From positions 124,001 to 188,000 of the IMG/VR virus record IMGVR_UViG_3300024350_000252: a stretch of 64,000 bases of DNA. One strand, 5' to 3'. The notes below the pieces were generated by a model. The model made no database searches. It saw only the letters and a program-made list of their open reading frames with translations, and was not told the DNA's origin. The first letter of the stretch is position 1. Each line of letters starts with the position of its first letter. The position numbers were made by a program, and so were the translations under genes. Positions 1 through 27,717 of the stretch are shown here, piece by piece.

Positions 1-1654
1 TTGATCCAGTATCTGCTGTGCTCTGTAACCATTTAACGTTAACGTCTGAAAGGAAAATTTTATCAAAGTTAGTAAGATAAAAATTATAAGTTTGAAAATC
101 AGCTACTGCTGGTTCTATGACATCCTTGATATAATTCAACAAAATAGTTTTATTAGAAAGTGTAAAACTAAAAGTTCTTTCGTTGTCATATCGATAGATG
201 ATTCCGTCGTCGGCAAATACATTTACACCACTGTACTTTCCGCTAGCATCAATGATATCAAAATTCCTGCTTATACCGCTGCTACTTCTGTTGATCGATT
301 TTACCTTGAGAATATCTTGGCTGCTAGATAGCGGAGCTAGATTATAATCTTCTCCTGTGATCATTCTATTCTGTGTATAATAGACAGCAGGAGCATTAGC
401 ACGGATAGTGTCCATGTCTTCAGATGCGGCGCTGTTATCCACGCTGTAATAGAGGCTACAGGTCACTGTCAAGGTTTCAGCAGTACCTCTAGAACTAGTA
501 TAAGGAATTGATAAAGTTACTCCTCGTAATTCGTTAGGAGAAATAATATATCTTAAACCATTGCTGACTCTATAATAAATCTTAAAAGAACCTCTAGGCA
601 AATTGCCATACACACCGTCAGCAAATAAAAGATCTACCTGATCATTATTTTTTGTAATAGCAGAATAGATATTCTTGACGCCGTTGCTAACACTATTATA
701 AACAATATTGTTGCCTGTCAAAGAAGAAACCTGTGTCCATTTTTCTCCTTGATTTCCTGCGGCATCGACAGCATATAGCCAAAGGTCATCATTGTTAATA
801 CCATTGGTAGTGATATTGATTATTTCGTTAACTGTCGGCTGTGTGATCGTAAAATCAGCCGTAGTCATGCTACCTTGCTTGAACAGTAAGAAAAATCCAG
901 TATTGCTGCTAGCATTACCTTTTCCGTCTTGTCTGTAGACAAAACCTAACTTATTGCCCGGAATAGGATCTTCTTCATAGATATAATCTTTTCCGATTAT
1001 GCTAGTACTAACCAATTCAAAATTCATAGAACGGCCGCCTGCTACCTTACTAAAAGTATAGATAGGAACCCCGGTATTTGAAGCATTAAATCTGTACTGA
1101 TCGGTAGTGATACCGTCGATAGAAGCAGTGCCTTGACTCTTGCCAAATTCAGTAGTAGACGGCATAGCAGCATTTAAAACAGCGATAAACTGTTGATACC
1201 AATTGGTATTTGTAGGATCATTCCATATCACGGTCTGTTTAGCAAGATTGATACCGTTGGCATCTGTAAGTGTTTCTGTAGTAGAAACCGTGTCAAATTT
1301 TAGTAGCCCCTGGGCAGCTTTATTTCTCTTGGCATTATAAGATAACATACGTGCCAACCTTAACACGCTGTCTTTTCTGCTGGCTAATTCTATGAAATTT
1401 TCTCTAGATGCTAAATCAATACGGAACGCAAGATTTTGTCCCAAGAAGGCGATAAGATCAATTAAGGCGACATATTCGCTAGACTCAATATAATCGTTAA
1501 AATCTTCAGCATAGTTTTCTCTCAGATAAGCGGTCATTACCCTTCTGAGATTTTCAAAATCGTAACTGGTAAAATCAGCATTTTTGAAAGTTTGGTAAAT
1601 CCTCTTCCAATCTTCTGCCAATATTAAATTATTTTGTCTAGCTGTGGTTGTCAT
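1..1654 (-). CDS. Baseplate wedge subunit, T4 gp6-like (3' end runs off the window)
   Basis: Not in the ORF track because no stop lies in the window. Hand translation from ATG at 1654: MTTTARQNNLILAEDWKRIYQTFKNADFTSYDFENLRRVMTAYLRENYAEDFNDYIESSEYVALIDLIAFLGQNLAFRIDLASRENFIELASRKDSVLRLARMLSYNAKR, the typical gp6 N-terminus (DF..L, EN+..A...SV..LA..L.Y). It later contains LLFADGVYGNLP and IRANAPAVYYTQNRMITGEDY. Open to position 2. Confidence 0.9.
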   Translation of the reverse strand, partial: MTTTARQNNLILAEDWKRIYQTFKNADFTSYDFENLRRVMTAYLRENYAEDFNDYIESSEYVALIDLIAFLGQNLAFRIDLASRENFIELASRKDSVLRLARMLSYNAKRNKAAQGLLKFDTVSTTETLTDANGINLAKQTVIWNDPTNTNWYQQFIAVLNAAMPSTTEFGKSQGTASIDGITTDQYRFNASNTGVPIYTFSKVAGGRSMNFELVSTSIIGKDYIYEEDPIPGNKLGFVYRQDGKGNASSNTGFFLLFKQGSMTTADFTITQPTVNEIINITTNGINNDDLWLYAVDAAGNQGEKWTQVSSLTGNNIVYNSVSNGVKNIYSAITKNNDQVDLLFADGVYGNLPRGSFKIYYRVSNGLRYIISPNELRGVTLSIPYTSSRGTAETLTVTCSLYYSVDNSAASEDMDTIRANAPAVYYTQNRMITGEDYNLAPLSSSQDILKVKSINRSSSGISRNFDIIDASGKYSGVNVFADDGIIYRYDNERTFSFTLSNKTILLNYIKDVIEPAVADFQTYNFYLTNFDKIFLSDVNVKWLQSTADTGS

Positions 1655-1705
1655 GAATTAGCATCCTATCTTATATTTATTTGGTTTTAAAAACTGCGCA
1701 TATTA

Positions 1706-3788: not shown

Positions 3789-5915
3789 TTAATTGCCTCC
3801 ACTTGCTGTTGGACCTTCTGGTACTGTATCACCTTGCGGATCTTCTCCCTGTTTCTTAGGTAGACCGGCACCCGGTGCTAAAGAAGCATCTGTTCTTGTA
3901 GCATTAATAGCATCGCTAACTTGGCCTTTATCTCTCATTAATCTTAATTTGTTTGTATACATACCGTCTTTGAAAATAGCATAACTCTTTGTTATTCTAA
4001 AAAATCCGCTGAAAGGACTATCCGATGCTCCGCTGTTGGGGAAAGGATAAGTCGCTTGTCCTCTACGAGGAGCATCGTTTGGTGTTTTAAATCTTATATA
4101 AATCCTAACTTCTTGAGAATTATAAGCTGCTGCTCCATCTGAATTGATGCCGTCTCCTTGTTTCGCAGGAAAATAACCACCGTATCCTTCATCACTAAAA
4201 TAATACGGATCTCCATATATTTCGAGATCAGCAGTCAGTTGATCATAAGTGTCTATTAAATTTTTCTGCATCTGTCTTGCTACTAATACTTCAGGACTAT
4301 CGGCTGCTGCGCCTGAATTTGGTGCCGGCACTGCCGAAGGATCTAAATTTGCTGGTGCTGAGCTAGTAGCACTTGTTGTCACTGCTCCACTGACTCCTGA
4401 ACTATCTTGTCTTATAACAGTAACAGGTGTAGATGCGTTAGCTGCGGATGGGTTTGATCCAGAAGCATATTCTGGAACCCCTGTGAATATAGTTTGGTAA
4501 TAGGTGTTATCTAGAGTTATATTCCAACTGATGATATCATCGTTTTGTCCTGTATAGAGAAAATCGTATTTCTTTCTTACTAGAGTCGGATCTAATCCTT
4601 CGGCTGGTACAGCAGGATTTTTTACCATAGCAGCATTTACTCTATAAGGCATGACATAATAATAAAAGGTCTTACCTAATTGTCCGCCACGTTTAGCATC
4701 CGGACCTAATTCAGGTTTTGGTTTCACAACAGCTCTAATAGTGAACCAATTGATGAAACCATTTTCTACTTTTTCAAAGGCTTTAGCACAAAACTCGCTG
4801 TTTAATACTATCTCTCTCACACAGGCTGTGATGGTTCTTAAACCTGAGCTTTCATCAGCAGTACCTACTGTAAATGTAAAACTTTTTTGTTTCTTGTCTC
4901 CAGAATTTACTGCGTCTCTAGAACTAGCAGCATCTCTATCTTGTTGACTTACTCTCGTTGCGTCACTGGCAAATGGTCTGCTGCCTGTATTTTCTGAAAA
5001 AGCAAAAGCAGAATCGGCCATCGCAGCCCAACGCGGAAGACTTTCATGATTTCCATCATTAAATTCACCATCTACACATTTTATAACAAAATTATCTGTC
5101 TGGCCTATAACTCCTTTTTCTTTTAATTCTATAAAAATGTCATCTAGTAATTTTGAAAGAGAACCTTCGATAGGATCCTCACCCCCTAATGCTTCTTCTA
5201 CAGTTTTACCAAAAGGTGCTACTGTATTTTTTAATGAATTGTTTACATTATTAAAAGCTTCTTGGCCGGCCGGCATTCCTTTGACTTTATAGATTGTACC
5301 GCTATCTGTATATGTAAAACTTATTTCCGTAAAACTAAACGGCAAATATCTAGTAGCTGCTGGTATCTTAGCACTGTTTCCTTCCGCTGTCCAGCCAACA
5401 TATTCTAGTTTTAAAACATATCTAGCATCTGTAGTATAATTTCCCCATCCTGCTTTTAACGATGCTACCTGTAAAGTTTGTAAAAACAAACCCATACTAT
5501 AAGGTTCATAAATGTCAAATTTAAAATTAGCTACAGGTTCGATACCGCTAGAATTTGTTATCTGCATAAATTCAACATTGTTAATGAAGAATTCTGTTTT
5601 GCCATAATAGTTTCCTACTCTCTTGTTGTTGTCTCTACCACCTTCTGACAACATGATATAAGTTAACGATCCGCCCTCTTTTCTATAACTTGTAGGATCG
5701 TTTAATTGAGCAGGAGTTAAACAAGCTATGCTGAACAGATATGTATAACTGGCATATTTTTTTAAAGGATTAGGTATTAGATTAGGAAACAGACTATCGG
5801 GGTTTGTAGAACTGCTAGGCGTGACAGCAACTGTCGCTGCGTTAGACGTCGCTGTAACTCGTACTACATTAGAAGACGAAACAAATGTCTGAGGTAGAGT
5901 TGAGCCTTCTGCCAT
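3789..5915 (-). CDS. Baseplate hub protein (gp27/Mu gp44-like, putative)
   Basis: 708 aa directly upstream of gp5; NPLKKYASYTY, EPYSMGLFLQTL, LEIYGDPYY, FSGFFRITKSYAIFKDGMYTNKLRLMR resemble contractile-tail hub proteins. Confidence 0.6.
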   Translation of the reverse strand: MAEGSTLPQTFVSSSNVVRVTATSNAATVAVTPSSSTNPDSLFPNLIPNPLKKYASYTYLFSIACLTPAQLNDPTSYRKEGGSLTYIMLSEGGRDNNKRVGNYYGKTEFFINNVEFMQITNSSGIEPVANFKFDIYEPYSMGLFLQTLQVASLKAGWGNYTTDARYVLKLEYVGWTAEGNSAKIPAATRYLPFSFTEISFTYTDSGTIYKVKGMPAGQEAFNNVNNSLKNTVAPFGKTVEEALGGEDPIEGSLSKLLDDIFIELKEKGVIGQTDNFVIKCVDGEFNDGNHESLPRWAAMADSAFAFSENTGSRPFASDATRVSQQDRDAASSRDAVNSGDKKQKSFTFTVGTADESSGLRTITACVREIVLNSEFCAKAFEKVENGFINWFTIRAVVKPKPELGPDAKRGGQLGKTFYYYVMPYRVNAAMVKNPAVPAEGLDPTLVRKKYDFLYTGQNDDIISWNITLDNTYYQTIFTGVPEYASGSNPSAANASTPVTVIRQDSSGVSGAVTTSATSSAPANLDPSAVPAPNSGAAADSPEVLVARQMQKNLIDTYDQLTADLEIYGDPYYFSDEGYGGYFPAKQGDGINSDGAAAYNSQEVRIYIRFKTPNDAPRRGQATYPFPNSGASDSPFSGFFRITKSYAIFKDGMYTNKLRLMRDKGQVSDAINATRTDASLAPGAGLPKKQGEDPQGDTVPEGPTASGGN

Positions 5916-8259: not shown

Positions 8260-9273
8260 ATGGGATTATTCAACAAAGTCGCTTGTTTCACAGATATCCA
8301 TTTTGGCCTTAAATCAGGTAGCAGGATCCACAACATAGATTGTGAAGATTTTGTCATATGGTTCTGTGAAGAAGCTAAAAAAGCAGGAGCTGAAACTTGT
8401 ATCTTCTTAGGTGACTGGCATCATAACAGGTCAACTACTGATGTCAGCACCATGAACTATACAGTTAGCAACATCGAAAGACTGAATGCTAACTTTGAAA
8501 AAGTCTATTTCATTTTAGGCAATCACGATCTATTCTACAAAGACAAGCGAGAAATTAATTCTATTGAATTCATGCGCCTGTTTCCAAACGTTGTGCCTAT
8601 CAAGGATCCGCTAACATTAGACGGTGTGACTTTTTTACCATGGTTAGTAGGCGATGAATGGCGTACTGTGCCAGATATCAAAAGTCGTTACATTTTTGGA
8701 CACTTTGAATTGCCATTATTCTATATGAACGCTATGGTACAGATGCCTGATCACGGTCAATTACAAAGCAACCATTTCGTTAACCAAGAATATGTGTTTA
8801 GCGGACATTTTCACAAACGTCAAACACAAGGCAATATTACTTATATTGGTAATGCTTTTCCACACAACTACGCAGATGCCGGCGATGATGATCGAGGTAT
8901 GATGTTGTTAGAGTGGGGAGGTGCGCCGGAATATCGAACTTGGCAACAACAGCCTGTTTACAGACACTACAAACTCAGCCGCATCATAGATTCTCCAGAT
9001 ACACTGTTAAAGTCTAAGATGCACTGTCGTGTTACCATAGACGTTCCTATCACTTTCGAAGAAGCTAACTTTATCAAAGAAACTTTTATAAAGCAATATG
9101 ATCTTCGAGAGCTGATGTTGATACCGGAAAAAACAGAAATCGAATCTAGTAATGCTGTTCCTGTGGATCTACAGTTTGAAAGTGTAGACACTATCGTGAT
9201 GAATCAGATAACCAGTATAGATTCCGAAACATATGACAAGAAGCTGCTGTTGGAGATCTACAATAACCTATGA
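8260..9273 (+). CDS. Recombination endonuclease subunit, gp47 (Mre11/SbcD-like)
   Basis: Metallophosphoesterase motifs DIHFG, FLGDWHH, GNHD, GHFE and SGHFH. Confidence 0.95.
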   Translation: MGLFNKVACFTDIHFGLKSGSRIHNIDCEDFVIWFCEEAKKAGAETCIFLGDWHHNRSTTDVSTMNYTVSNIERLNANFEKVYFILGNHDLFYKDKREINSIEFMRLFPNVVPIKDPLTLDGVTFLPWLVGDEWRTVPDIKSRYIFGHFELPLFYMNAMVQMPDHGQLQSNHFVNQEYVFSGHFHKRQTQGNITYIGNAFPHNYADAGDDDRGMMLLEWGGAPEYRTWQQQPVYRHYKLSRIIDSPDTLLKSKMHCRVTIDVPITFEEANFIKETFIKQYDLRELMLIPEKTEIESSNAVPVDLQFESVDTIVMNQITSIDSETYDKKLLLEIYNNL

Positions 9274-11048
9274 TAAAGATCAAGAATTTAACTGTTAAAA
9301 ACTTTATGAGTGTGGGTAATCAAACCCAAGCTGTGGATTTTGACAAGGGTCTGCTAACTTTGGTGCTAGGTGAAAATCTAGATCTCGGCGGCGATGATAT
9401 AGGAGCCCGCAACGGCACAGGTAAAACTACTATCATCAATGGTTTAAGTTATGCTATCTATGGACAAGCACTGACAAATATCAAACGTGATAATCTTATC
9501 AACAAGATCAATAGCAAAAACATGCTAGTTACTATCACGTTTGACAAGGATGGGCAAGAATATCATATTGAGCGCGGACGTAAACCCAATCTACTGAAGT
9601 TTAGCATTAACGGTCAAGAACAAAACCCAGACGATAAAGACGAAAGTCAAGGCGATTCTAGAGAAACACAGAAAGAAATCGAAAAAGTAATAGGTATGAG
9701 CCACGACATGTTCAAACACATCGTGGCTTTGAATACCTATACCGAGCCTTTCCTTAGCATGAAACCCAACGACCAACGTGCTATTATCGAACAGTTGTTA
9801 GGAATCACTATCTTGAGCGAAAAAGCCGAACTGTTAAAAGAAGGCATACGCATTTCTAAAGACATGATCGCTGCCGAAAATACCAAGATAGAAACTATCA
9901 AGGTATCTAATGAGCGCATACAGCAAAGTATCGAAGCATTAGAAAGAAAACTCAAACTATGGCAAACTAACAAAGATAATTCTATCAATGATCTAGAAAA
10001 AGCTATCAAGAAACTTGGTTTGATAGACATCGATCAAGAGATTGAAAATCAAAAAGCACTGGCAGAATGGAGCAAGAACAAAAAAGATCTAGACAGTCTC
10101 AATTCGCAGATGTCTAGACAGTCTGCGACCAAAGATAGAGAACAGAAAAATCTAGATAAACTAGAAAGCGAACTGCTGACTTTAGCTGAACACAAATGTC
10201 ATAGCTGTGGACAAGACATTCATGACGAGAAACACATGGTTATGGTCGAGAAAAAAGCACAGCAAGTAGAAGAAAGCCAAGCTGCCGTTGCTGAATCAGA
10301 AAAACAAATAGCAGAACTACTAGACGCTATCGCAGAAATAGGCGAGCTAGGAGCAGCACCTCTGGTTAATTACGACAATATCGACGATGCTTATAATCAC
10401 AAGACTACTCTTAGCGGTCTAGAAAAAGATCTAGCAGCCAAACAAGCTGAACAAGATCCGTATCAAGAACAAATCGATGAACTTAGAAACACAGCGGTAC
10501 AGGAAATAGACTGGAGCAAGGTCAATGATCTAACCAAAGTCAAAGATCATCAGGAGTTTTTGTACAAATTACTGACTAACAAAGATAGTTTTGTACGTAA
10601 AAAAATCATTGATCAGAATTTAAACTATCTAAACACACGTCTAACTTATTATCTGGATAAGATAGGATTGCCACATACTGTGGAATTCCAAAGCGATCTT
10701 ACTGTGCTTATCACACAACTAGGACAAGATCTAGATTTTGACAATCTAAGCCGAGGAGAACGCAATAGATTGATCTTGAGCTTGAGCTGGGCGTTCCGTG
10801 ATGTGTGGGAAAACCTATATCAAAGCATCAATTTACTGTTTATCGACGAAATGATCGATTCAGGCATGGATGCTAGTGGTGTAGAATCCAGCATAGCTAT
10901 CCTAAAGAAGATGACACGTGAACGCGAGAAGAATGTGTTTTTGATCAGCCATAGAGACGATCTAACCAGCAGGGTTAATCAGGTGCTCAAGGTCATCAAG
11001 GAAAACGGTTTCACTTCATATTCTAACGATGTAGAAATACTACAATGA
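9270..11048 (+). CDS. Recombination ATPase subunit, gp46 (Rad50/SbcC-like)
   Basis: Walker A NGTGKTT, zinc hook CHSC within a coiled coil, signature LSRGE, Walker B LFIDE, H-loop ISH; ATGA overlap with gp47. Confidence 0.95.
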   Translation: MIKIKNLTVKNFMSVGNQTQAVDFDKGLLTLVLGENLDLGGDDIGARNGTGKTTIINGLSYAIYGQALTNIKRDNLINKINSKNMLVTITFDKDGQEYHIERGRKPNLLKFSINGQEQNPDDKDESQGDSRETQKEIEKVIGMSHDMFKHIVALNTYTEPFLSMKPNDQRAIIEQLLGITILSEKAELLKEGIRISKDMIAAENTKIETIKVSNERIQQSIEALERKLKLWQTNKDNSINDLEKAIKKLGLIDIDQEIENQKALAEWSKNKKDLDSLNSQMSRQSATKDREQKNLDKLESELLTLAEHKCHSCGQDIHDEKHMVMVEKKAQQVEESQAAVAESEKQIAELLDAIAEIGELGAAPLVNYDNIDDAYNHKTTLSGLEKDLAAKQAEQDPYQEQIDELRNTAVQEIDWSKVNDLTKVKDHQEFLYKLLTNKDSFVRKKIIDQNLNYLNTRLTYYLDKIGLPHTVEFQSDLTVLITQLGQDLDFDNLSRGERNRLILSLSWAFRDVWENLYQSINLLFIDEMIDSGMDASGVESSIAILKKMTREREKNVFLISHRDDLTSRVNQVLKVIKENGFTSYSNDVEILQ

Positions 11049-11275
11049 GCACAGATACGCATGATCGCTTGATCAAAGCCTTCCAGGAATATTTTAAATG
11101 GCAGGACAAGTTTGAGTACGGCACAAGCGATGCTGCTGGTATAAAGGCACGATATTGGTTATCAGAAATACGCAATGAGGCAAGTGTAAGGCGAGTAGAA
11201 ATACAAAACAAAAGGCAAAACCGTAAGGAATCCAGAAAAGGCAAGCTAGGAAGGCCACCGAAAATAACTAAGTGA
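11045..11275 (+). CDS. Small basic protein, possibly histone-H1-like (Hc1-type) DNA-binding protein
   Basis: 76 aa, K/R-rich C-terminus; AAGIKARYWLSEIRNEASVRRVEIQ resembles A.G.RARK.L.EI......R.EI of small phage basic proteins (recognition by eye). Confidence 0.4.
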   Translation: MSTDTHDRLIKAFQEYFKWQDKFEYGTSDAAGIKARYWLSEIRNEASVRRVEIQNKRQNRKESRKGKLGRPPKITK

Positions 11276-11710
11276 GTGCTTTGGACATATCAAAATCAAA
11301 TCGTAGAAGAAATACCCGAAGGCTATATTGGCTTTGTTTATCTCATCACGAATCTTACTACCGGCCAGAAGTACATAGGCAAGAAACTAGCACAATTTAA
11401 ACGTACTAAACCTCCTCTCAAAGGCAAAAAACTCAAGCGCAGAAGCACAGTAGAAAGCGATTGGCGCGATTACTGGGGTTCTAGCGACAGGTTAAACGCA
11501 GACGTCCAAGCATTAGGTCCGGAAAACTTCACCAGAGAAATACTTTATTACTGTAAAAGCAAGGCAGAAATGGGCTATTTAGAGGCAAGAGAGCAGTTTG
11601 AACGCCGAGTTTTAGAAACAGATGACTATTATAATGGCATTATAAACGTCAGAGTAGGCGGCTCAAACATACTTAGGCAGCGTCTTTTAGAGCACGAAAA
11701 GGCAAAATAA
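11276..11710 (+). CDS. Stand-alone GIY-YIG family endonuclease (Seg-like)
   Basis: 144 aa; GFVYLITNLTTGQKYIGKK (GIY-YIG motif), YWGSS, FTREIL, YLEAREQF, YYN; GTG start abuts the upstream stop codon. Confidence 0.85.
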   Translation: MLWTYQNQIVEEIPEGYIGFVYLITNLTTGQKYIGKKLAQFKRTKPPLKGKKLKRRSTVESDWRDYWGSSDRLNADVQALGPENFTREILYYCKSKAEMGYLEAREQFERRVLETDDYYNGIINVRVGGSNILRQRLLEHEKAK

Positions 11711-12175
11711 TCGCCAAAAAAACCCGCACCGGTGACTGTTATGGTGCCCAAAATCCGCTCTGATGTGTGGCGGTAAGGAACTCTACCTTGGCGAAGAGGT
11801 ACTCAGCAACTATCCTTTACAGGACGTCGATCGCAAAAAAGCCTGCGGTTTTGCTGTTTGAACGGAGTCAATATAGGCTAAATGAGGGGAGAAAAACCCC
11901 ACGTATACGCTAGTGATAGCAGATTAGCGTATGCCGCCGTCATGATAAGACGGAGCTCGAGGTACCGGATGACCGCCTCTGTAATGCTCTACTGCTGTGT
12001 GACTGTGCTACTCAGATAATGCTCAGTTTTATTTTTAGCCCGGCGACGGGCTAAGTGTGACCATACTATCTAGATAATACTTAAATGCTTCGCATCTAAG
12101 ATTAAATACTATCAGAAGAAATAAAATGTGGCTGAGCGAAAGCGATAGACACAAGTGAGCGTAGCTCACTTCAAA
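11711..12175 (+). ncRNA. Candidate large structured non-coding RNA (family not recognised)
   Basis: About 465 nt with no credible ORF, ~46% GC by hand count against AT-rich spacers elsewhere. At least 11 local helices, e.g. GTATACGCTA 11903-12 / TAGCGTATGC 11925-34; TTAGCCCG-GCGA-CGGGCTAA 12035-54; AAGTGAGC/GCTCACTT 12153-71; GC-GAAA-GC 12136-43. GNRA loops favour + polarity. Ends are approximate. Confidence 0.65.
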
Positions 12176-12179
12176 AAGA

Positions 12180-12186
12180 ATAAATA
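12180..12186 (+). promoter_or_regulatory. T4-type late promoter (ATAAATA)
   Basis: ATAAATA about 27 nt before the 417-aa gene. The same TAAATA core recurs before many structural genes: - strand 1674-80, 7299-7305, 14611-18; + strand 14589-96, 21587-93, 22489-95, 26426-32, 27248-54, 30513-19, 35813-19, 42261-68, 48389-95, 56441-47, 59768-74, 63332-38. T4 gp55 recognises TATAAATA. Confidence 0.7.
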
Positions 12187-12213
12187 TAAAATAGAATTTA
12201 GGAAACGTTCACT

Positions 12214-13467
12214 ATGAGAATCAATGATATCTTAATCGAATCACAGGTCAAAGAAGCACCACAAGGCATGCTCAAACGAGCTGGACTTGGTATAATGAGT
12301 AAATTTGGCAGTGATAAAGCTGCTGGTAAACTAGATACTGGTGCTATCGCTAATGCTCTAATGAGAGATTTTAACAGATTCCTTGGTGCTACTAAGCTAG
12401 AACCTGATGCTGATGCTGTACTACGTTTCCTACAAAGCAAAGGTTATCCATCTGATGGCGCTAAGATGGTTTTAGACAAAGAAGCTAACTCTGCTACTGG
12501 TAACAGAGCTCCGAAAGGTCCTATGGGCGGTGGCATCATGGGCAAGATGAAAGGCGCTGCTGGCTCTTTAGGCAACAGGCTAAAAGCTAATCCTGAACAG
12601 CCACAAGACAGGATTGAGCCAACAGGAGACGACGATGCGACAGCTACAGCTCAACCTAGCGCATCACAAGCACAACCAACAGCACAACCAACAGCAACAG
12701 CACAACCAACAGCAGCAGCACAACCAACAACAAAACCTAGCGCATCACAAACACAAACGCCAGCGCAACAGAACACTAATAAAATTGATAAAAAAGCACG
12801 TAAAGCCGCAGGTAAAGCTGCTATGGCTACACAGCAGGCTGCAGCTGACGCTCAGAACAAACCTGGATGGGCACGGACCGCTGATGATAAGATAAGAATA
12901 CAGGCCGCAAAAGGTGTTAATGCTAATGCTGCCGGATCTTTTAAGTCAGGAGCAGCTAAAATCCGTTCTAAAGGTCTAAACATGAGCATGTACACTGAAG
13001 AAGCTCTTCCACAAGCTACACTAGACAAAGCATTCATGCAAGCTGCTCATGATGCTGCCAAGATGGGCTATGGACTAGATCCAAACACAGGTAATATCGT
13101 TGACCAAGGTGGTGCCGCACAAGGTCCTATGGGTGGAGGCAATCAAGGTGCTGCCCAGGGCGGTGGCAGTGCTTGGGACAGTTTTAAACAAGGTGTCGCT
13201 GGAGGTCTAACTGGACAGCAAGCAGGCGATGCTTCTGGTGGCGGACAAAGCGGTATACAAGGTTCGCTAAACGTCAATGCGTTAACACAGCTATTGCCTA
13301 ATGTCAATCCAGCTCAATTAAAAATGGCTGTGAGCACGGTCAAGAGCGGTGGACAGTTAAGTAGGACACATCAAGCAGTGCTAGCATCTGCTATGATCGA
13401 TCTGATGAAAGCTGATCCTGCTACTACACAAAAAGCATTCACGCTGTTAAAACGAATACAGGCTTAA
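12214..13467 (+). CDS. Hypothetical low-complexity late protein (possible internal head protein)
   Basis: 417 aa, A/Q/G-rich with AQPT repeats; preceded by a late promoter; N-terminus MRINDILIE. Confidence 0.75.
   Translation: MRINDILIESQVKEAPQGMLKRAGLGIMSKFGSDKAAGKLDTGAIANALMRDFNRFLGATKLEPDADAVLRFLQSKGYPSDGAKMVLDKEANSATGNRAPKGPMGGGIMGKMKGAAGSLGNRLKANPEQPQDRIEPTGDDDATATAQPSASQAQPTAQPTATAQPTAAAQPTTKPSASQTQTPAQQNTNKIDKKARKAAGKAAMATQQAAADAQNKPGWARTADDKIRIQAAKGVNANAAGSFKSGAAKIRSKGLNMSMYTEEALPQATLDKAFMQAAHDAAKMGYGLDPNTGNIVDQGGAAQGPMGGGNQGAAQGGGSAWDSFKQGVAGGLTGQQAGDASGGGQSGIQGSLNVNALTQLLPNVNPAQLKMAVSTVKSGGQLSRTHQAVLASAMIDLMKADPATTQKAFTLLKRIQA
12653..12750 (+). repeat. Coding tandem repeat (AQPT/ASQ units)
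   Basis: GCACAACCAACA units repeated, flanked by a 17-nt direct repeat AACCTAGCGCATCACAA at 12653-69 and 12734-50. Confidence 0.85.
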
Positions 13468-27251: not shown

Positions 27252-27321
27252 ATAAAGTATCTAAGTTTATTATGCGGCACCCACCGCGTAGACCTAGAAC
27301 GTCAACATAAGGAGAAAACAA

Positions 27322-27717
27322 ATGGGACGTCCAGTAAAAAAGATTAATTTTGGTACAGCGGCAGGATCAGATTCAGGTATTTTGGTATCTGCTATGAAAA
27401 CTAGCACAGCTCGTACTAGCTACATCGTAGCACAACGTGGTTCAAACAAATACGATGTATACAATGCTACAGACGGTACATTCCGTGTAACACTAGCAGA
27501 AGGTACAAGTTTTGCTGCCGACACAGCAGGAACAGCAGTCATGGTAGGTTACAGAGATCCGGGTAATGATGCTACAAGAGTTACTATAAAGAAACTAACA
27601 GCTCGCATCATGACAGGTTTTGATGGCACACGCTACAGATGGGCACTAGTAAATGATTCATCATCTGACTACATCCAATTGTATGTCAAGGCTAACGGTA
27701 CAACCGACTACGTATAA
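27322..27717 (+). CDS. Hypothetical virion protein
   Basis: 131 aa; strong SD AAGGAG; late promoter at 27248. Confidence 0.75.
   Translation: MGRPVKKINFGTAAGSDSGILVSAMKTSTARTSYIVAQRGSNKYDVYNATDGTFRVTLAEGTSFAADTAGTAVMVGYRDPGNDATRVTIKKLTARIMTGFDGTRYRWALVNDSSSDYIQLYVKANGTTDYV

What the first reader, a model, noticed from the sequence alone, without database searches (positions are those of the whole stretch)
11276..12175. Stand-alone GIY-YIG nuclease followed directly by a ~460-nt ornate structured RNA: candidate nuclease-RNA system
Seen: in a genome whose spacers are otherwise short and AT-rich, 11711-12175 is ORF-free, ~46% GC (hand count) and tiled almost end to end with helices: 11726-47, 11755-73, 11784-801, 11813-24, 11833-54, 11886-900, 11903-34 (10 bp with a G-U), 11937-53, nested 11953-89, 12035-54 (8 bp, GCGA loop), 12080-100, 12127-53 (GAAA loop) and 12153-71. 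It starts at the stop codon of a minimal 144-aa GIY-YIG nuclease with no obvious appended DNA-recognition domain and ends just before the next late promoter. Established: TnpB carries its omega-RNA at the 3' end of the ORF, IscB/HEARO pair a nuclease with a large RNA, and phages encode large ornate RNAs such as GOLLD and ROOL. I recognise no tRNA, tmRNA, RNase P, group I/II or hammerhead consensus here. Inference: either a ribonucleoprotein partner (possibly a guide or specificity RNA) of the nuclease, or an independent large ncRNA co-transcribed with the gp47-gp46 operon.
Basis: partly seen in the sequence, partly recalled or inferred. Interest (0 to 1): 0.85.

Follow-up and report, generated by a model that had tools for sequence, protein, structure and literature searches.

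The report
Large phage RNA with twin address elements
The ORF-free stretch after the small GIY-YIG nuclease gene encodes a real ~460-nt pseudoknotted RNA whose first third is the known orphan Polynucleobacter-1 family; it does not need that nuclease, and it carries two always-identical, fast-changing 7-base elements that make its unknown function testable.

Summary
Observation confirmed.

It is partly known. 11721-11859 is Polynucleobacter-1 RNA (RF01718, 68 bits). Weinberg 2010 already placed this RNA downstream of the PSSM2_218 gene family, shown here to be this GIY-YIG family.

New here:
- The RNA runs from the nuclease stop codon to a hairpin at 12154-12170.
- The 3' 320 nt, absent from Rfam, are strongly supported: 62 pairs, 52 with compensatory changes, two pseudoknots.
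- The universal core holds two elements, ACUC-N7 (12010-12020) and AUCU-N7 (12068-12078). The N7 are identical in 151/157 loci, with 19 different 7-mers and no complementary partner in cis.

An obligatory RNP link to the nuclease is not supported:
- The same RNA follows a PDDEXK_15 nuclease in five phage loci.
- In freshwater Burkholderiales it sits between DUF6641 and a 188-aa Xer-like recombinase, with no GIY-YIG.
- Three sampled cultured-phage homologues of the nuclease lack it.

Best reading: an autonomous trans-acting RNA presenting two identical specificity elements. A guide role for neighbouring minimal DNA enzymes remains possible (about 15%).

The parts
8260..11048 (+). gp47-like (8260-9273) and gp46-like (9270-11048) recombination nuclease genes that head the transcription unit
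   Evidence: Pfam Metallophos and AAA_23/SMC_N hits. The synteny gp46-orf76-nuclease-RNA is conserved in more than 140 loci.
11045..11275 (+). orf76, a small basic protein always found between gp46 and the nuclease
   Evidence: Conserved in related loci. The L155 counterpart hits PF07432, histone H1-like Hc1 (E 1.9e-13). The window copy has no Pfam or PHROG hit.
11276..11710 (+). Stand-alone GIY-YIG nuclease of 144 aa (SegE-type catalytic domain only; phrog_447, mis-named 'NAD synthetase')
   Evidence: PF19835, E 1.9e-35, residues 3-123. phrog_447, E 1e-38. 46% identical to P-SSM2 PSSM2_218. 134 distinct RNA-adjacent homologues are 139-159 aa long, with the GFVY, YIGKK, REIL and YYNG motifs invariant or nearly so.
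11711..12175 (+). The whole structured RNA (extended Polynucleobacter-1 family member)
   Evidence: Conserved at 65-85% identity in about 150 loci, whereas the downstream gene is not alignable. No codon periodicity. Many G-U pairs fix the strand.
11712..11793 (+). Closing helix P0 (11712-11716 with 11789-11793), which puts the RNA 5' end at the stop codon
   Evidence: 11714/11791 covary: GC 54, CG 13, TA 2. The helix is also in the MFE fold.
11721..11859 (+). 5' domain, the Rfam RF01718 Polynucleobacter-1 RNA
   Evidence: cmscan 68.1 bits (gathering score 37), E 2.6e-12, full-length model 1-141.
11886..11934 (+). Hairpin 11886-89/11897-900 and long hairpin 11903-14/11923-34 with the conserved loop GAUAGCAG
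   Evidence: Helices 1 and 2. All 16 pairs show changes on both sides; 88% and 95% of cells are paired.
11916..11998 (+). Pseudoknot PK1: loop 11916-21 (AUAGCA) pairs with 11993-98 (UGCUGU)
   Evidence: Helix 3: 6 of 6 pairs covary, 98.3% paired. Also MI pairs 11916/98, 11919/95 and 11921/93.
11939..11973 (+). Pseudoknot PK2: 11939-43 (GUCAU) pairs with 11969-73 (AUGAC), inside the invariant GGUACCGG...ACCGCC core
   Evidence: Helix 4: 99.5% paired. 11941/71 is UA 47 / CG 31 with no exception.
11952..11990 (+). Nested helices 11952-56/11986-90 and 11959-63/11975-79
   Evidence: Helices 5 and 6 (92% and 98.5% paired; 7 pairs with changes on both sides).
12010..12020 (+). Twin element E1: ACUC followed by the variable 7-mer AGAUAAU (12014-12020)
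   Evidence: Identity covariation with E2: 12014/72 GG 47, AA 31; 12015/73 GG 65, CC 12, AA 1; 12018/76 AA 70, GG 8; no exceptions at these three. N7 identical in 151/157 loci, 19 variants.
12036..12053 (+). GNRA-capped hairpin between the twin elements
   Evidence: Helix 7. 12037/12052 covary: UA 36, AU 19, CG 7.
12068..12078 (+). Twin element E2: AUCU followed by the same 7-mer AGAUAAU (12072-12078)
   Evidence: As for E1. The same rule holds in bacterial and other divergent types.
12085..12095 (+). Small hairpin with a CUUCG loop
   Evidence: Helix 8. 12085/95 and 12086/94 covary.
12127..12153 (+). Hairpin with tandem G.A pairs and a GAAA loop (the GAGCGAAAGCGA block)
   Evidence: Inner helix 10 is 95% paired with covariation. 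The outer stem is poorly aligned in A2, 49.6% paired. The block is conserved in all RNA types.
12154..12170 (+). 3'-terminal hairpin (terminator-like)
   Evidence: Helix 11: 7 of 7 pairs covary, 99.3% paired. It is followed by three or more U in 21 of 40 relatives but not in the window. The terminator scan did not call it.
12179..12186 (+). Conserved AATAAATA box, a T4-type late-promoter-like element for the next gene. It marks the end of the RNA unit.
   Evidence: ATAAATA is conserved across loci, 25-40 nt before the next ATG. The promoter role is inferred from the T4 late-promoter consensus TATAAATA (established knowledge).
12214..13467 (+). Downstream 417-aa low-complexity protein. It is not part of the system and marks a mosaic boundary.
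   Evidence: No Pfam hit. Mean nucleotide identity to relatives drops from about 0.7 in the RNA to about 0.45 here.

Best explanation
11711-12175 encodes a full-length member of the Polynucleobacter-1 RNA family. It is a ~460-nt non-coding RNA with several domains and at least two pseudoknots.

In this T4-like (Kyanoviridae-like) freshwater phage it is made as the 3'-terminal part of the gp47-gp46-orf76-GIY-YIG transcript. It begins at the nuclease stop codon and ends in its own terminal hairpin just before the late-promoter box of the next gene.

It is an autonomous RNA gene that also travels in other contexts, not a dedicated subunit of the GIY-YIG nuclease.

The most likely mode of action is in trans. 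A rigid, highly conserved scaffold displays two single-stranded elements, ACUC-N7 and AUCU-N7, whose seven variable bases are kept identical to each other while they change quickly between lineages. The RNA would therefore recognise, twice over, one sequence-defined partner that is not encoded in cis. That partner could be two copies or two sites of a nucleic acid bound by base pairing, or a dimeric reader.

Shown: the RNA, its extent, strand, structure and family; the twin-element rule; the variable neighbours.
Inferred: co-transcription, trans action, and recognition through the 7-mers.
For: Family and extent:
- RF01718 at 68 bits.
- P0 helix at the stop codon and a terminal hairpin with 7 of 7 covarying pairs.

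Structure of the 3' 320 nt: 62 pairs, 88.9% paired, 52 pairs with changes on both sides, covariation 0.523 against 0.183 in shuffles (0/500) and 0.10 or less when slid, two pseudoknots at 98% or more paired.

RNA rather than protein: no codon periodicity (0.68/0.70/0.64, against 0.74/0.83/0.46 in gp46). The ORF pieces have no Pfam hit.

Autonomy:
- The same RNA has PDDEXK_15 instead of GIY-YIG in L106, L118, L127, L155 and L196. L094 has a weaker partial match (nhmmer 35.8 bits, about half the 3'-domain model) with PDDEXK_15 downstream. L108 and L172 have no nuclease upstream.
- Freshwater Burkholderiales carry it between DUF6641 (22/22) and a 188-aa Xer-like recombinase (12/14), without GIY-YIG.
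- The nuclease homologues sampled from cultured phages have no downstream gap: S-SRM01, P-HM1, phiM12. In P-SSM2 the next gene abuts. Melnitz has no RF01718 hit.

Twin elements:
- N7 identical in 151/157 loci, with 19 different 7-mers.
- At least 23 changes on a tree built from the rest of the RNA, with E1 = E2 in 77/78.
- The twin-module half is the only part shared by all RNA types.

No cis partner: complementarity to a sequence's own 7-mer is no better than to other 7-mers in the flanking RNA (4.47 vs 4.63, 5.17 vs 5.18, 4.67 vs 4.55). There is no covarying complement within +-2.5 kb.

Different 7-mers coexist in one sample (L002 and L003, both from 3300026573).
Against: - There is no expression data, so transcription, RNA ends and processing are inferred.
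- No partner for the 7-mers was found. The window has no enrichment of matching or complementary sites, so 'trans pairing' rests on elimination.
- Identity of two elements could also be kept by a co-evolving dimeric protein or by gene conversion.
- The recurrent neighbourhood of minimal DNA enzymes (GIY-YIG, PDDEXK_15, catalytic-domain-only tyrosine recombinase) is not explained by a purely autonomous RNA.
- Almost all phage loci come from one syntenic lineage, so independent contexts are few.
Confidence: 0.5

Rival explanations
1. Specificity RNA for neighbouring minimal DNA enzymes. The RNA forms an RNP with whichever catalytic-domain-only enzyme is encoded next to it: GIY-YIG or PDDEXK_15 nuclease in phages, a Xer-like recombinase in bacteria. 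The twin identical 7-mers would direct the enzyme to a two-fold symmetric or duplicated DNA site.
For: - In the three well-sampled contexts (GIY-YIG, PDDEXK_15 and bacterial loci) a small DNA-cutting or DNA-joining enzyme without a recognisable DNA-binding domain sits next to the RNA. These are GIY-YIG with Pfam covering residues 3-123 of 144, PDDEXK_15 of 167-188 aa, and a recombinase of 188 aa aligning only to XerD residues 102-283.
- The RNA starts at the nuclease stop codon, as TnpB reRNAs do.
- Variable segments sit in an invariant scaffold, with 19 variants.
- Two identical guides would suit inverted half-sites or two identical partner sites.
Against: - The RNA occurs with no adjacent nuclease in L108 and L172.
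- The nuclease family is widespread without the RNA.
- The enzymes are non-homologous, and in bacteria the recombinase is downstream rather than upstream.
- 7 nt is very short for a guide.
- No match or complement of the 7-mers occurs at cassette flanks or within +-2.5 kb.
- The same 7-mer (AGAUAAU) occurs with both GIY-YIG and PDDEXK_15 loci.
Confidence: 0.15
2. The nuclease genes are free-standing homing-type endonucleases parked beside the RNA gene. Its highly conserved sequence serves as landing pad or target, and the RNA itself does something unrelated. The adjacency would be selfish-element ecology, not function.
For: - Two unrelated nuclease families occupy the same slot between orf76 and the RNA.
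- The GIY-YIG matches homing-endonuclease profiles.
- Its homologues sit at different genomic places in different phages.
- The locus lies at a sharp boundary of sequence similarity, as described for nuclease genes in other phages (PMC10055350, title and abstract).
Against: - No empty slot was seen: none of about 150 phage loci has orf76 directly followed by the RNA.
- The protein lacks the C-terminal DNA-binding domain of Seg enzymes. It is conserved in length and motifs like a core gene.
- The excess synonymous conservation in L003-L081 (0.66 vs 0.40) comes from a set picked by similarity to this very protein. It vanishes in the RNA-picked set (0.35 vs 0.34).
Confidence: 0.2
3. A cis-acting 3' element of the early operon. 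It could be a stabiliser, a processing or termination module, or an antitoxin-like RNA that restrains the nuclease encoded just upstream.
For: It abuts the stop codon and ends in a hairpin before the next promoter. Nucleases are often toxic, and type III antitoxin RNAs are repeat-based (established knowledge).
Against: - 460 nt with two pseudoknots and near-invariant single strands is far more than a stabiliser needs.
- In bacteria the RNA stands alone behind a divergent promoter region and precedes, rather than follows, its enzyme neighbour.
- The twin elements are 48-59 nt apart, not tandem ToxI-like units, and no endoRNase toxin is adjacent.
- PADLOC shows no defence-system match beyond two weak homing-endonuclease profiles for the GIY-YIG itself.
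Confidence: 0.1
4. Not an RNA: a DNA-level element (iterons, recombination or packaging site), or the decayed C-terminal DNA-binding domain of a once longer Seg-type endonuclease.
For: Two direct repeats kept identical could be protein-binding DNA sites. Seg enzymes normally carry a C-terminal domain (established knowledge).
Against: - 52 of 62 pairs show compensatory changes, with abundant G-U pairs that would be A-C on the other strand.
- GNRA-type loops are present.
- There is no codon periodicity and no Pfam hit in the ORF pieces.
- The nuclease is 139-159 aa in all 134 homologues.
Confidence: 0.03

Closest known systems
Polynucleobacter-1 RNA motif (Rfam RF01718; Weinberg et al. 2010, PMC2864571)
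   Same: The 5' 139 nt match the full model at 68 bits. The gene context is the same as reported, downstream of the GOS11034/PSSM2_218 family. The habitat is the same (fresh water or estuary). The authors' alignment already shows conserved 3' flanks and a 'tail/tailpknot' subfamily.
   Different: - The Rfam model covers only about 30% of the RNA. The 3' 320 nt, with two pseudoknots and the twin elements, are not modelled.
- That 3' part, not the Rfam part, is what all variants share.
- In 2010 the upstream gene was not recognised as a GIY-YIG nuclease, and no instance was known in a phage genome. Here the RNA sits in T4-like phage contigs.
Transposon guide RNAs: TnpB reRNA/omega-RNA and IscB HEARO omega-RNA
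   Same: A large structured RNA lies directly next to a compact nuclease gene, here starting at the ORF's stop codon. It has a conserved scaffold with short variable segments.
   Different: - There is no RuvC/HNH TnpB or IscB protein.
- The RNA and the nuclease each occur without the other.
- The variable segments are internal, duplicated and only 7 nt long.
- They do not match flanking DNA.
IS110/IS1111 bridge (seek) RNAs
   Same: One structured RNA with two separate short specificity segments. In bacteria it is encoded next to a recombinase gene.
   Different: Bridge RNAs serve DEDD recombinases and carry two different loops, one for target and one for donor. Here the two segments are identical, the bacterial neighbour is a tyrosine recombinase, and the phage neighbours are nucleases. 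No target or donor match was found.
Free-standing Seg-type GIY-YIG homing endonucleases of T4-like phages
   Same: The N-terminal SegE-type GIY-YIG domain. An intergenic position next to a highly conserved gene. An alternative nuclease family in the same slot.
   Different: The DNA-binding C-terminal half is missing (144 aa), and no presence/absence polymorphism is seen in this lineage.
Large orphan phage-associated RNAs (GOLLD, ROOL)
   Same: Large size, ornate pseudoknotted fold, phage or prophage location, unknown function.
   Different: There is no sequence or structure match at E up to 10. The architecture differs. Identical twin elements have not, to my knowledge, been reported for these RNAs.
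cow-rumen-2 RNA (RF02947)
   Same: A weak match (20.9 bits, E 0.25) over 11903-12007 with the same order of features: a UAGC-loop hairpin, GCCGCC, GGAUGACC, GUAA-GC.
   Different: The score is far below the gathering score of 66, and the match was not recovered in a search of 12 short related loci (10 carrying the RNA) at E up to 1. It is a lead only.

Membership tests
Polynucleobacter-1 RNA (RF01718) | Covariance-model score at or above the curated gathering score, over the full model | tested here: met
   68.1 bits against 37, model positions 1-141 of 141, E 2.6e-12. Relatives score 53-121 bits.
Polynucleobacter-1 RNA (RF01718) | Reported gene context: downstream of the GOS11034 / PSSM2_218 family | tested here: met
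   PSSM2_218 is 46% identical to the window nuclease, E 4e-24. The original statement is in the supplement of PMC2864571.
Polynucleobacter-1 RNA (RF01718) | 3' 'tail' with a pseudoknot to the hairpin loop (the authors' tailpknot subfamily) | tested here: inconclusive
   Loop CCU can pair with AGG at 11875-79 in most sequences, but the fourth pair is inconsistent: ACCU with AGGC 10 times, ACCU with AGGU 10 times.
TnpB/IscB-type guide RNA (OMEGA systems) | Cognate RuvC (TnpB) or RuvC/HNH (IscB) nuclease encoded with the RNA | tested here: not met
   The neighbour is a GIY-YIG (PF19835) or PDDEXK_15 protein. No TnpB or IscB domain was found.
TnpB/IscB-type guide RNA (OMEGA systems) | Terminal guide segment matching DNA next to the element | tested here: not met
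   The variable segments are internal and duplicated. No match or complement at the flanks or within +-2.5 kb covaries with them.
TnpB/IscB-type guide RNA (OMEGA systems) | Obligatory co-occurrence of RNA and nuclease | tested here: not met
   The RNA occurs without GIY-YIG in 5 PDDEXK_15 loci, in L108 and L172, and in 27 bacterial loci. The nuclease occurs without the RNA in the cultured phages sampled.
Group I intron with GIY-YIG homing endonuclease | Match to intron models and interruption of a host gene | tested here: not met
   No Intron_gpI hit at E up to 10. The RNA lies between complete genes, and the next gene has its own promoter box and start codon.
Free-standing Seg-type homing endonuclease | N-terminal GIY-YIG catalytic domain | tested here: met
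   PF19835 E 1.9e-35. TIGR01453 group I intron endonuclease, E 7.8e-07, below its cutoff.
Free-standing Seg-type homing endonuclease | C-terminal DNA-binding domain giving site specificity | tested here: not met
   Only about 20 residues follow the catalytic domain. All 134 homologues are 139-159 aa long.
Free-standing Seg-type homing endonuclease | Sporadic presence among close relatives | tested here: not met
   GIY-YIG lies upstream in 142 RNA-bearing loci. No empty site was seen, only replacement by PDDEXK_15.
IS110-type bridge RNA | DEDD (RuvC-like) plus Tnp-domain recombinase neighbour, and two different target and donor loops | tested here: not met
   The bacterial neighbour is a PF00589 tyrosine recombinase. 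The two segments are identical.
Type III toxin-antitoxin RNA (ToxI-like) | Tandem repeats directly upstream of an endoRNase toxin gene | tested here: not met
   The two modules are embedded in a larger fold. The neighbours are DNA enzymes. PADLOC gives no defence-system match, only two weak homing-endonuclease profiles for the GIY-YIG.
Intrinsic terminator (3' hairpin 12154-12170) | G+C-rich hairpin followed by a U tract | tested here: inconclusive
   The hairpin is strongly supported. Three or more U follow it in 21 of 40 relatives but not in the window. The scan did not call it.

The most novel reading that the evidence does not exclude
The extended Polynucleobacter-1 RNA is a portable, reprogrammable specificity module. 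Its two identical 7-nt elements base-pair with the two half-sites, or two copies, of a DNA site. They thereby aim whichever catalytic-domain-only enzyme is encoded beside it: GIY-YIG or PDDEXK_15 nuclease in T4-like phages, a Xer-like tyrosine recombinase in Burkholderiales islands. That would be an RNA-guided system built on enzyme families for which I know of no reported RNA guidance (my literature search found none).
Probability: 0.12. Interest if true: 0.95.

Novelty: new member of a known kind. Interest (0 to 1): 0.6.

Why it matters
Polynucleobacter-1 has been an orphan RNA since 2010. Rfam models it as a 141-nt motif, and no function has been proposed.

This locus and about 150 relatives show three things:
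- The real unit is a ~460-nt pseudoknotted RNA.
- It is carried by uncultured T4-like freshwater phages and by genomic islands of freshwater Burkholderiales.
- Its universal core is a pair of single-stranded 7-mers that change often (at least 23 times in the sampled set) yet always change together.

That rule gives a concrete handle on function: swap one or both 7-mers, then look for what they bind.

The RNA's recurrent company of minimal nucleases and a minimal recombinase raises the possibility of RNA-directed DNA enzymes of new families. If instead the RNA acts alone, it would be a rare example of a large phage RNA with bivalent, rapidly diversifying recognition, which suggests a role in conflict or self/non-self discrimination.

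It also corrects a widespread mis-annotation: the 'NAD synthetase' of phrog_447 / T4-GC 213 is a GIY-YIG nuclease.

Tried and rejected
1. Other known RNAs. Rfam at gathering score over the whole window and at E up to 10 over 11600-12300 gives nothing beyond RF01718 and a weak cow-rumen-2 match. There are no tRNA or tmRNA genes.

2. Decayed protein domain. There is no codon periodicity, and the three ORF pieces have no Pfam hit.

3. Conformational switch, with E1 and E2 as alternative partners of one pyrimidine-rich segment. Complementarity to a sequence's own 7-mer is no better than to foreign 7-mers in the linker, upstream or downstream RNA.

4. Cis or flank targets. No complementary or extra same-sense copy covaries with the 7-mer within +-2.5 kb or in the 8-kb bacterial loci. 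A cluster of ATTATCT sites about 1.4 kb upstream is a conserved gp46 coding motif seen only for one 7-mer type. Two exact ATTATCTAGA sites in the window (31968, 62523) lie inside long ORFs.

5. Recent horizontal spread of the nuclease. The higher conservation of GIY-YIG than of gp46 in L003-L081, including 4-fold sites (0.66 vs 0.40), is a selection artefact of picking loci by similarity to that protein. It disappears in loci picked by the RNA motif. There is no identity gradient in the flanks.

6. Defence-system membership. PADLOC gives no defence-system hit for any neighbour. The only matches are two weak homing-endonuclease profiles for the GIY-YIG.

7. Solved-structure relatives of the nuclease by sequence: none at E up to 1.

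8. Literature. There is nothing on DUF6641, and no RNA-guided tyrosine recombinase or GIY-YIG system relates to this RNA.

9. The 5'-loop/tail pseudoknot is only weakly supported.

10. RNAalifold on a raw MAFFT alignment found only part of the structure. The final model came from mutual information plus inspection.
Full report
**1. What is at the coordinates**

The window is a T4-like phage segment. The gene order is:
- gp47-like, 8260-9273
- gp46-like, 9270-11048
- a small basic ORF, 11045-11275
- a 144-aa ORF, 11276-11710
- an ORF-free stretch, 11711-12213
- a 417-aa low-complexity protein, from 12214

The 144-aa protein is a SegE-type GIY-YIG domain. PF19835 matches at E 1.9e-35 over residues 3-123, and phrog_447 matches at E 1e-38. 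phrog_447 is named 'NAD synthetase', which is a mis-annotation.

The nearest cultured relative is Methylophilales phage Melnitz (Kyanoviridae), at 65% amino-acid identity. An 8.4-kb stretch around the locus is identical to IMG/VR contig 3300026573_000301.

GC of 11711-12175 is 46.2% against 40.6% for the window.

**2. Part of it is a known family**

Rfam places Polynucleobacter-1 RNA (RF01718) at 11721-11859 on the + strand, at 68.1 bits against a gathering score of 37. Nothing else in 11600-12300 reaches significance. The best remaining match is cow-rumen-2 at 20.9 bits over 11903-12007. No tRNA or tmRNA genes are present.

The supplement of Weinberg et al. 2010 (PMC2864571) makes three relevant statements:
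- These RNAs lie downstream of genes of family GOS11034, possibly homologous to PSSM2_218 of cyanophage P-SSM2.
- No instance was found in a purified phage.
- Their alignment carries conserved 3' flanks and a 'tail/tailpknot' subfamily.

I fetched PSSM2_218. It is a 145-aa 'NAD synthetase' (T4-GC 213), 46% identical to the window nuclease (E 4e-24).

**3. Relatives**

- A protein-based scan of viral contigs gave 80 loci (L002-L081), taken from 596 or more matches.
- A scan for the invariant RNA core GGTACCGGNNNACCGCC gave 120 more loci. About half of these carry the RNA.
- A scan of bacterial genomes with the Polynucleobacter-type core gave 27 loci.

In the phage loci the synteny gp46-orf76-nuclease-gap is conserved, and the gap stays about 500 nt and ORF-free. 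The RNA is 65-85% identical across loci whose downstream gene is not even alignable.

INPHARED phages contain no DNA match to the RNA part.

**4. Structure**

Mutual information on 78 non-identical sequences, followed by a formal count on a 40-sequence alignment of 11860-12181 (A2), supports 11 helices:

| Measure | Value |
|---|---|
| Pairs tested | 62 |
| Cells paired | 88.9% (shuffles 70.6%) |
| Pairs with changes on both sides | 52 |
| Covariation score | 0.523 (shuffles 0.183; 0/500 reach it) |
| Score with slid partners | 0.10 or less |

Two pseudoknots stand out:
- The loop 11916-21 pairs with 11993-98 (98% paired, 6 of 6 pairs covary).
- 11939-43 pairs with 11969-73 (99.5% paired).

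A closing helix, 11712-16 with 11789-93, covaries: 11714/11791 is GC 54, CG 13. This puts the 5' end at the stop codon.

The last helix, 12154-70 (7 of 7 pairs covary), is followed by a short U tract in about half of the relatives. A conserved AATAAATA box comes next.

Frequent G-U pairs fix the strand as +. There is no codon periodicity, and the ORF pieces have no Pfam hit.

The exception, 11937-53, is replaced by the second pseudoknot.

**5. The universal core and the twin elements**

A profile of the 3' domain finds its distal half in three further groups:
- loci L059-L079, which lack RF01718
- loci L027 and L072, which also lack RF01718
- the bacterial loci

The distal half consists of the two modules and the terminal hairpins. 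The Rfam motif is therefore not the conserved heart of the family.

That heart holds two modules of the form GUNUGR-N5-8-A(CUC|UCU)-N7. The two N7 covary by identity, not by complementarity:
- In the 78-sequence set, 12014/12072 is GG 47 / AA 31.
- 12015/12073 is GG 65 / CC 12 / AA 1.
- 12018/12076 is AA 70 / GG 8.
- None of these three has an exception.
- Across all loci the N7 are identical in 151 of 157 candidates, with 19 different 7-mers spaced 48-59 nt apart.
- Bacterial copies obey the same rule with other 7-mers, such as AGCGAAA, AGAGAAA, GGAGAAA and ACCAAAA.
- On a tree of the rest of the RNA the 7-mer changes at least 23 times, with E1 = E2 in 77 of 78.

I found no complementary partner:
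- not in the RNA
- not within +-2.5 kb
- not in the bacterial loci
- not as an enrichment in the window

**6. Is the nuclease a partner?**

The census of what lies upstream of the RNA gives:
- GIY-YIG: 142 loci
- PDDEXK_15 (PF24608): 5 loci (L106, L118, L127, L155, L196). L094, a weaker partial match, has it downstream.
- DUF6641, divergently oriented: 7 bacterial loci
- Neither nuclease: L108 and L172

In freshwater Burkholderiales (Polynucleobacter, Limnohabitans, an Oxalobacteraceae genome and several MAGs) there is no GIY-YIG. Instead:
- DUF6641 lies upstream in 22 of 22 loci.
- A 188-aa tyrosine recombinase lies downstream in 12 of 14. It matches PF00589 at E 3e-24 and aligns only to the catalytic half of XerD.

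Conversely, the nuclease family matches 790 cultured-phage records:
- S-SRM01, P-HM1 and phiM12 have no room for the RNA.
- In P-SSM2 the next gene abuts the nuclease gene.
- Melnitz has no RF01718 hit.

The RNA-adjacent nucleases are intact: 134 distinct proteins of 139-159 aa with invariant motifs.

The nuclease's apparent extra conservation in L003-L081 is a selection artefact.

An obligatory RNP is therefore not supported. It remains striking, though, that each well-sampled context supplies a catalytic-domain-only DNA enzyme.

**7. Mechanism**

The best-supported reading is an autonomous RNA gene transcribed at the tail of the early operon. It would act in trans through two identical exposed 7-mers held on a rigid scaffold. 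The partner is not encoded nearby. It must differ even between closely related carriers, and different 7-mers coexist in one sample. This argues against a conserved housekeeping RNA as the partner. It favours a variable partner such as a mobile element, a competitor or a co-evolving reader.

Rivals:
- A guide or adaptor RNA for the neighbouring enzymes.
- Nucleases acting as selfish homing elements parked next to a conserved RNA gene.
- A cis-acting 3' element.
- A DNA-level or protein-coding explanation, which is essentially excluded.

None of the steps beyond structure and distribution could be tested without expression or binding data.

**8. Verdict**

| Item | Assessment |
|---|---|
| Observation | Confirmed |
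| Interpretation | Partly supported |
| Classification | A new, first phage-resident and full-length member of a known orphan family |
| Genuinely new, unexplained feature | The twin-element rule |
| Interest | Moderate to high. It turns an orphan RNA into a testable system and leaves open a small chance of a new class of RNA-directed DNA enzymes. |

Noticed in passing
window 27253-27324 (+): A second Rfam hit in the window: freshwater-2 RNA (RF02980), 53.8 bits against a gathering score of 49.9. It ends in AAGGAGAAAACAAAUG, so it is a 5'-leader motif running into a start codon.
   Followed up: no
window 332-1705: A 1.37-kb stretch without any ORF of 75 aa or more (GC 37%), longer than the studied gap. 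It has no Rfam hit at gathering score. It may hold many small ORFs or another non-coding element.
   Followed up: no
L223 3626-5640; L221 5705-7712; 27 loci L202-L228: In freshwater Burkholderiales the RNA sits in a fixed trio: a divergent DUF6641 gene, the RNA (the gap is about 800 nt, longer than in phages), and a 188-aa tyrosine recombinase with the catalytic domain only. Around it lie accessory genes such as Phd/ParE toxin-antitoxin and GNAT genes.
   Followed up: partly
L059-L079 (e.g. L059 4448-4750) and L027/L072 (e.g. L072 4427-4570): Downstream of the same GIY-YIG gene, these phage groups have different 5' domains of about 150-300 nt with no RF01718 hit, joined to the shared twin-module core. 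These are possibly undescribed alternative 5' domains.
   Followed up: no
window 11045-11275; L155 9115-9300: The small basic protein always found between gp46 and the nuclease has a counterpart in L155 that hits histone H1-like Hc1 (PF07432, E 1.9e-13). It may be a nucleic-acid-binding protein of the same operon.
   Followed up: no
window 12176-12230 and onward: Sharp mosaic boundary. Mean identity to relatives falls from about 0.7 (gp46, nuclease, RNA) to about 0.45 immediately after the RNA, so the nuclease-RNA pair sits at a border of genetic exchange.
   Followed up: partly
L052 ~860-1010; L010/L011 ~4800-4860; L098, L095, L107: Some relatives carry AT-rich insertions of 40-150 nt at one fixed point of the RNA, between 11984 and 11985 in window numbering. 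Some contain repeated TTGTACA-like palindromes. This looks like a tolerated expansion site or the landing site of a small inserted element.
   Followed up: no
L025/L086 (same contig) ~4677-4724; L014: Natural deletion variants that lack the first twin module (window-equivalent about 11989-12064) and keep only E2.
   Followed up: no
L172 3911-4304 and 5169-5240: A viral contig that carries the RNA in a non-gp46 context also encodes a permuted (alpha-type) tmRNA and a tRNA.
   Followed up: no
GenBank/PHROG annotation of homologues (e.g. P-SSM2 PSSM2_218, P-HM1 PHM1_182): The GIY-YIG family phrog_447 / T4-GC 213 is widely annotated as 'NAD synthetase' in cyanophage and other phage records. The domain evidence says GIY-YIG nuclease.
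   Followed up: yes
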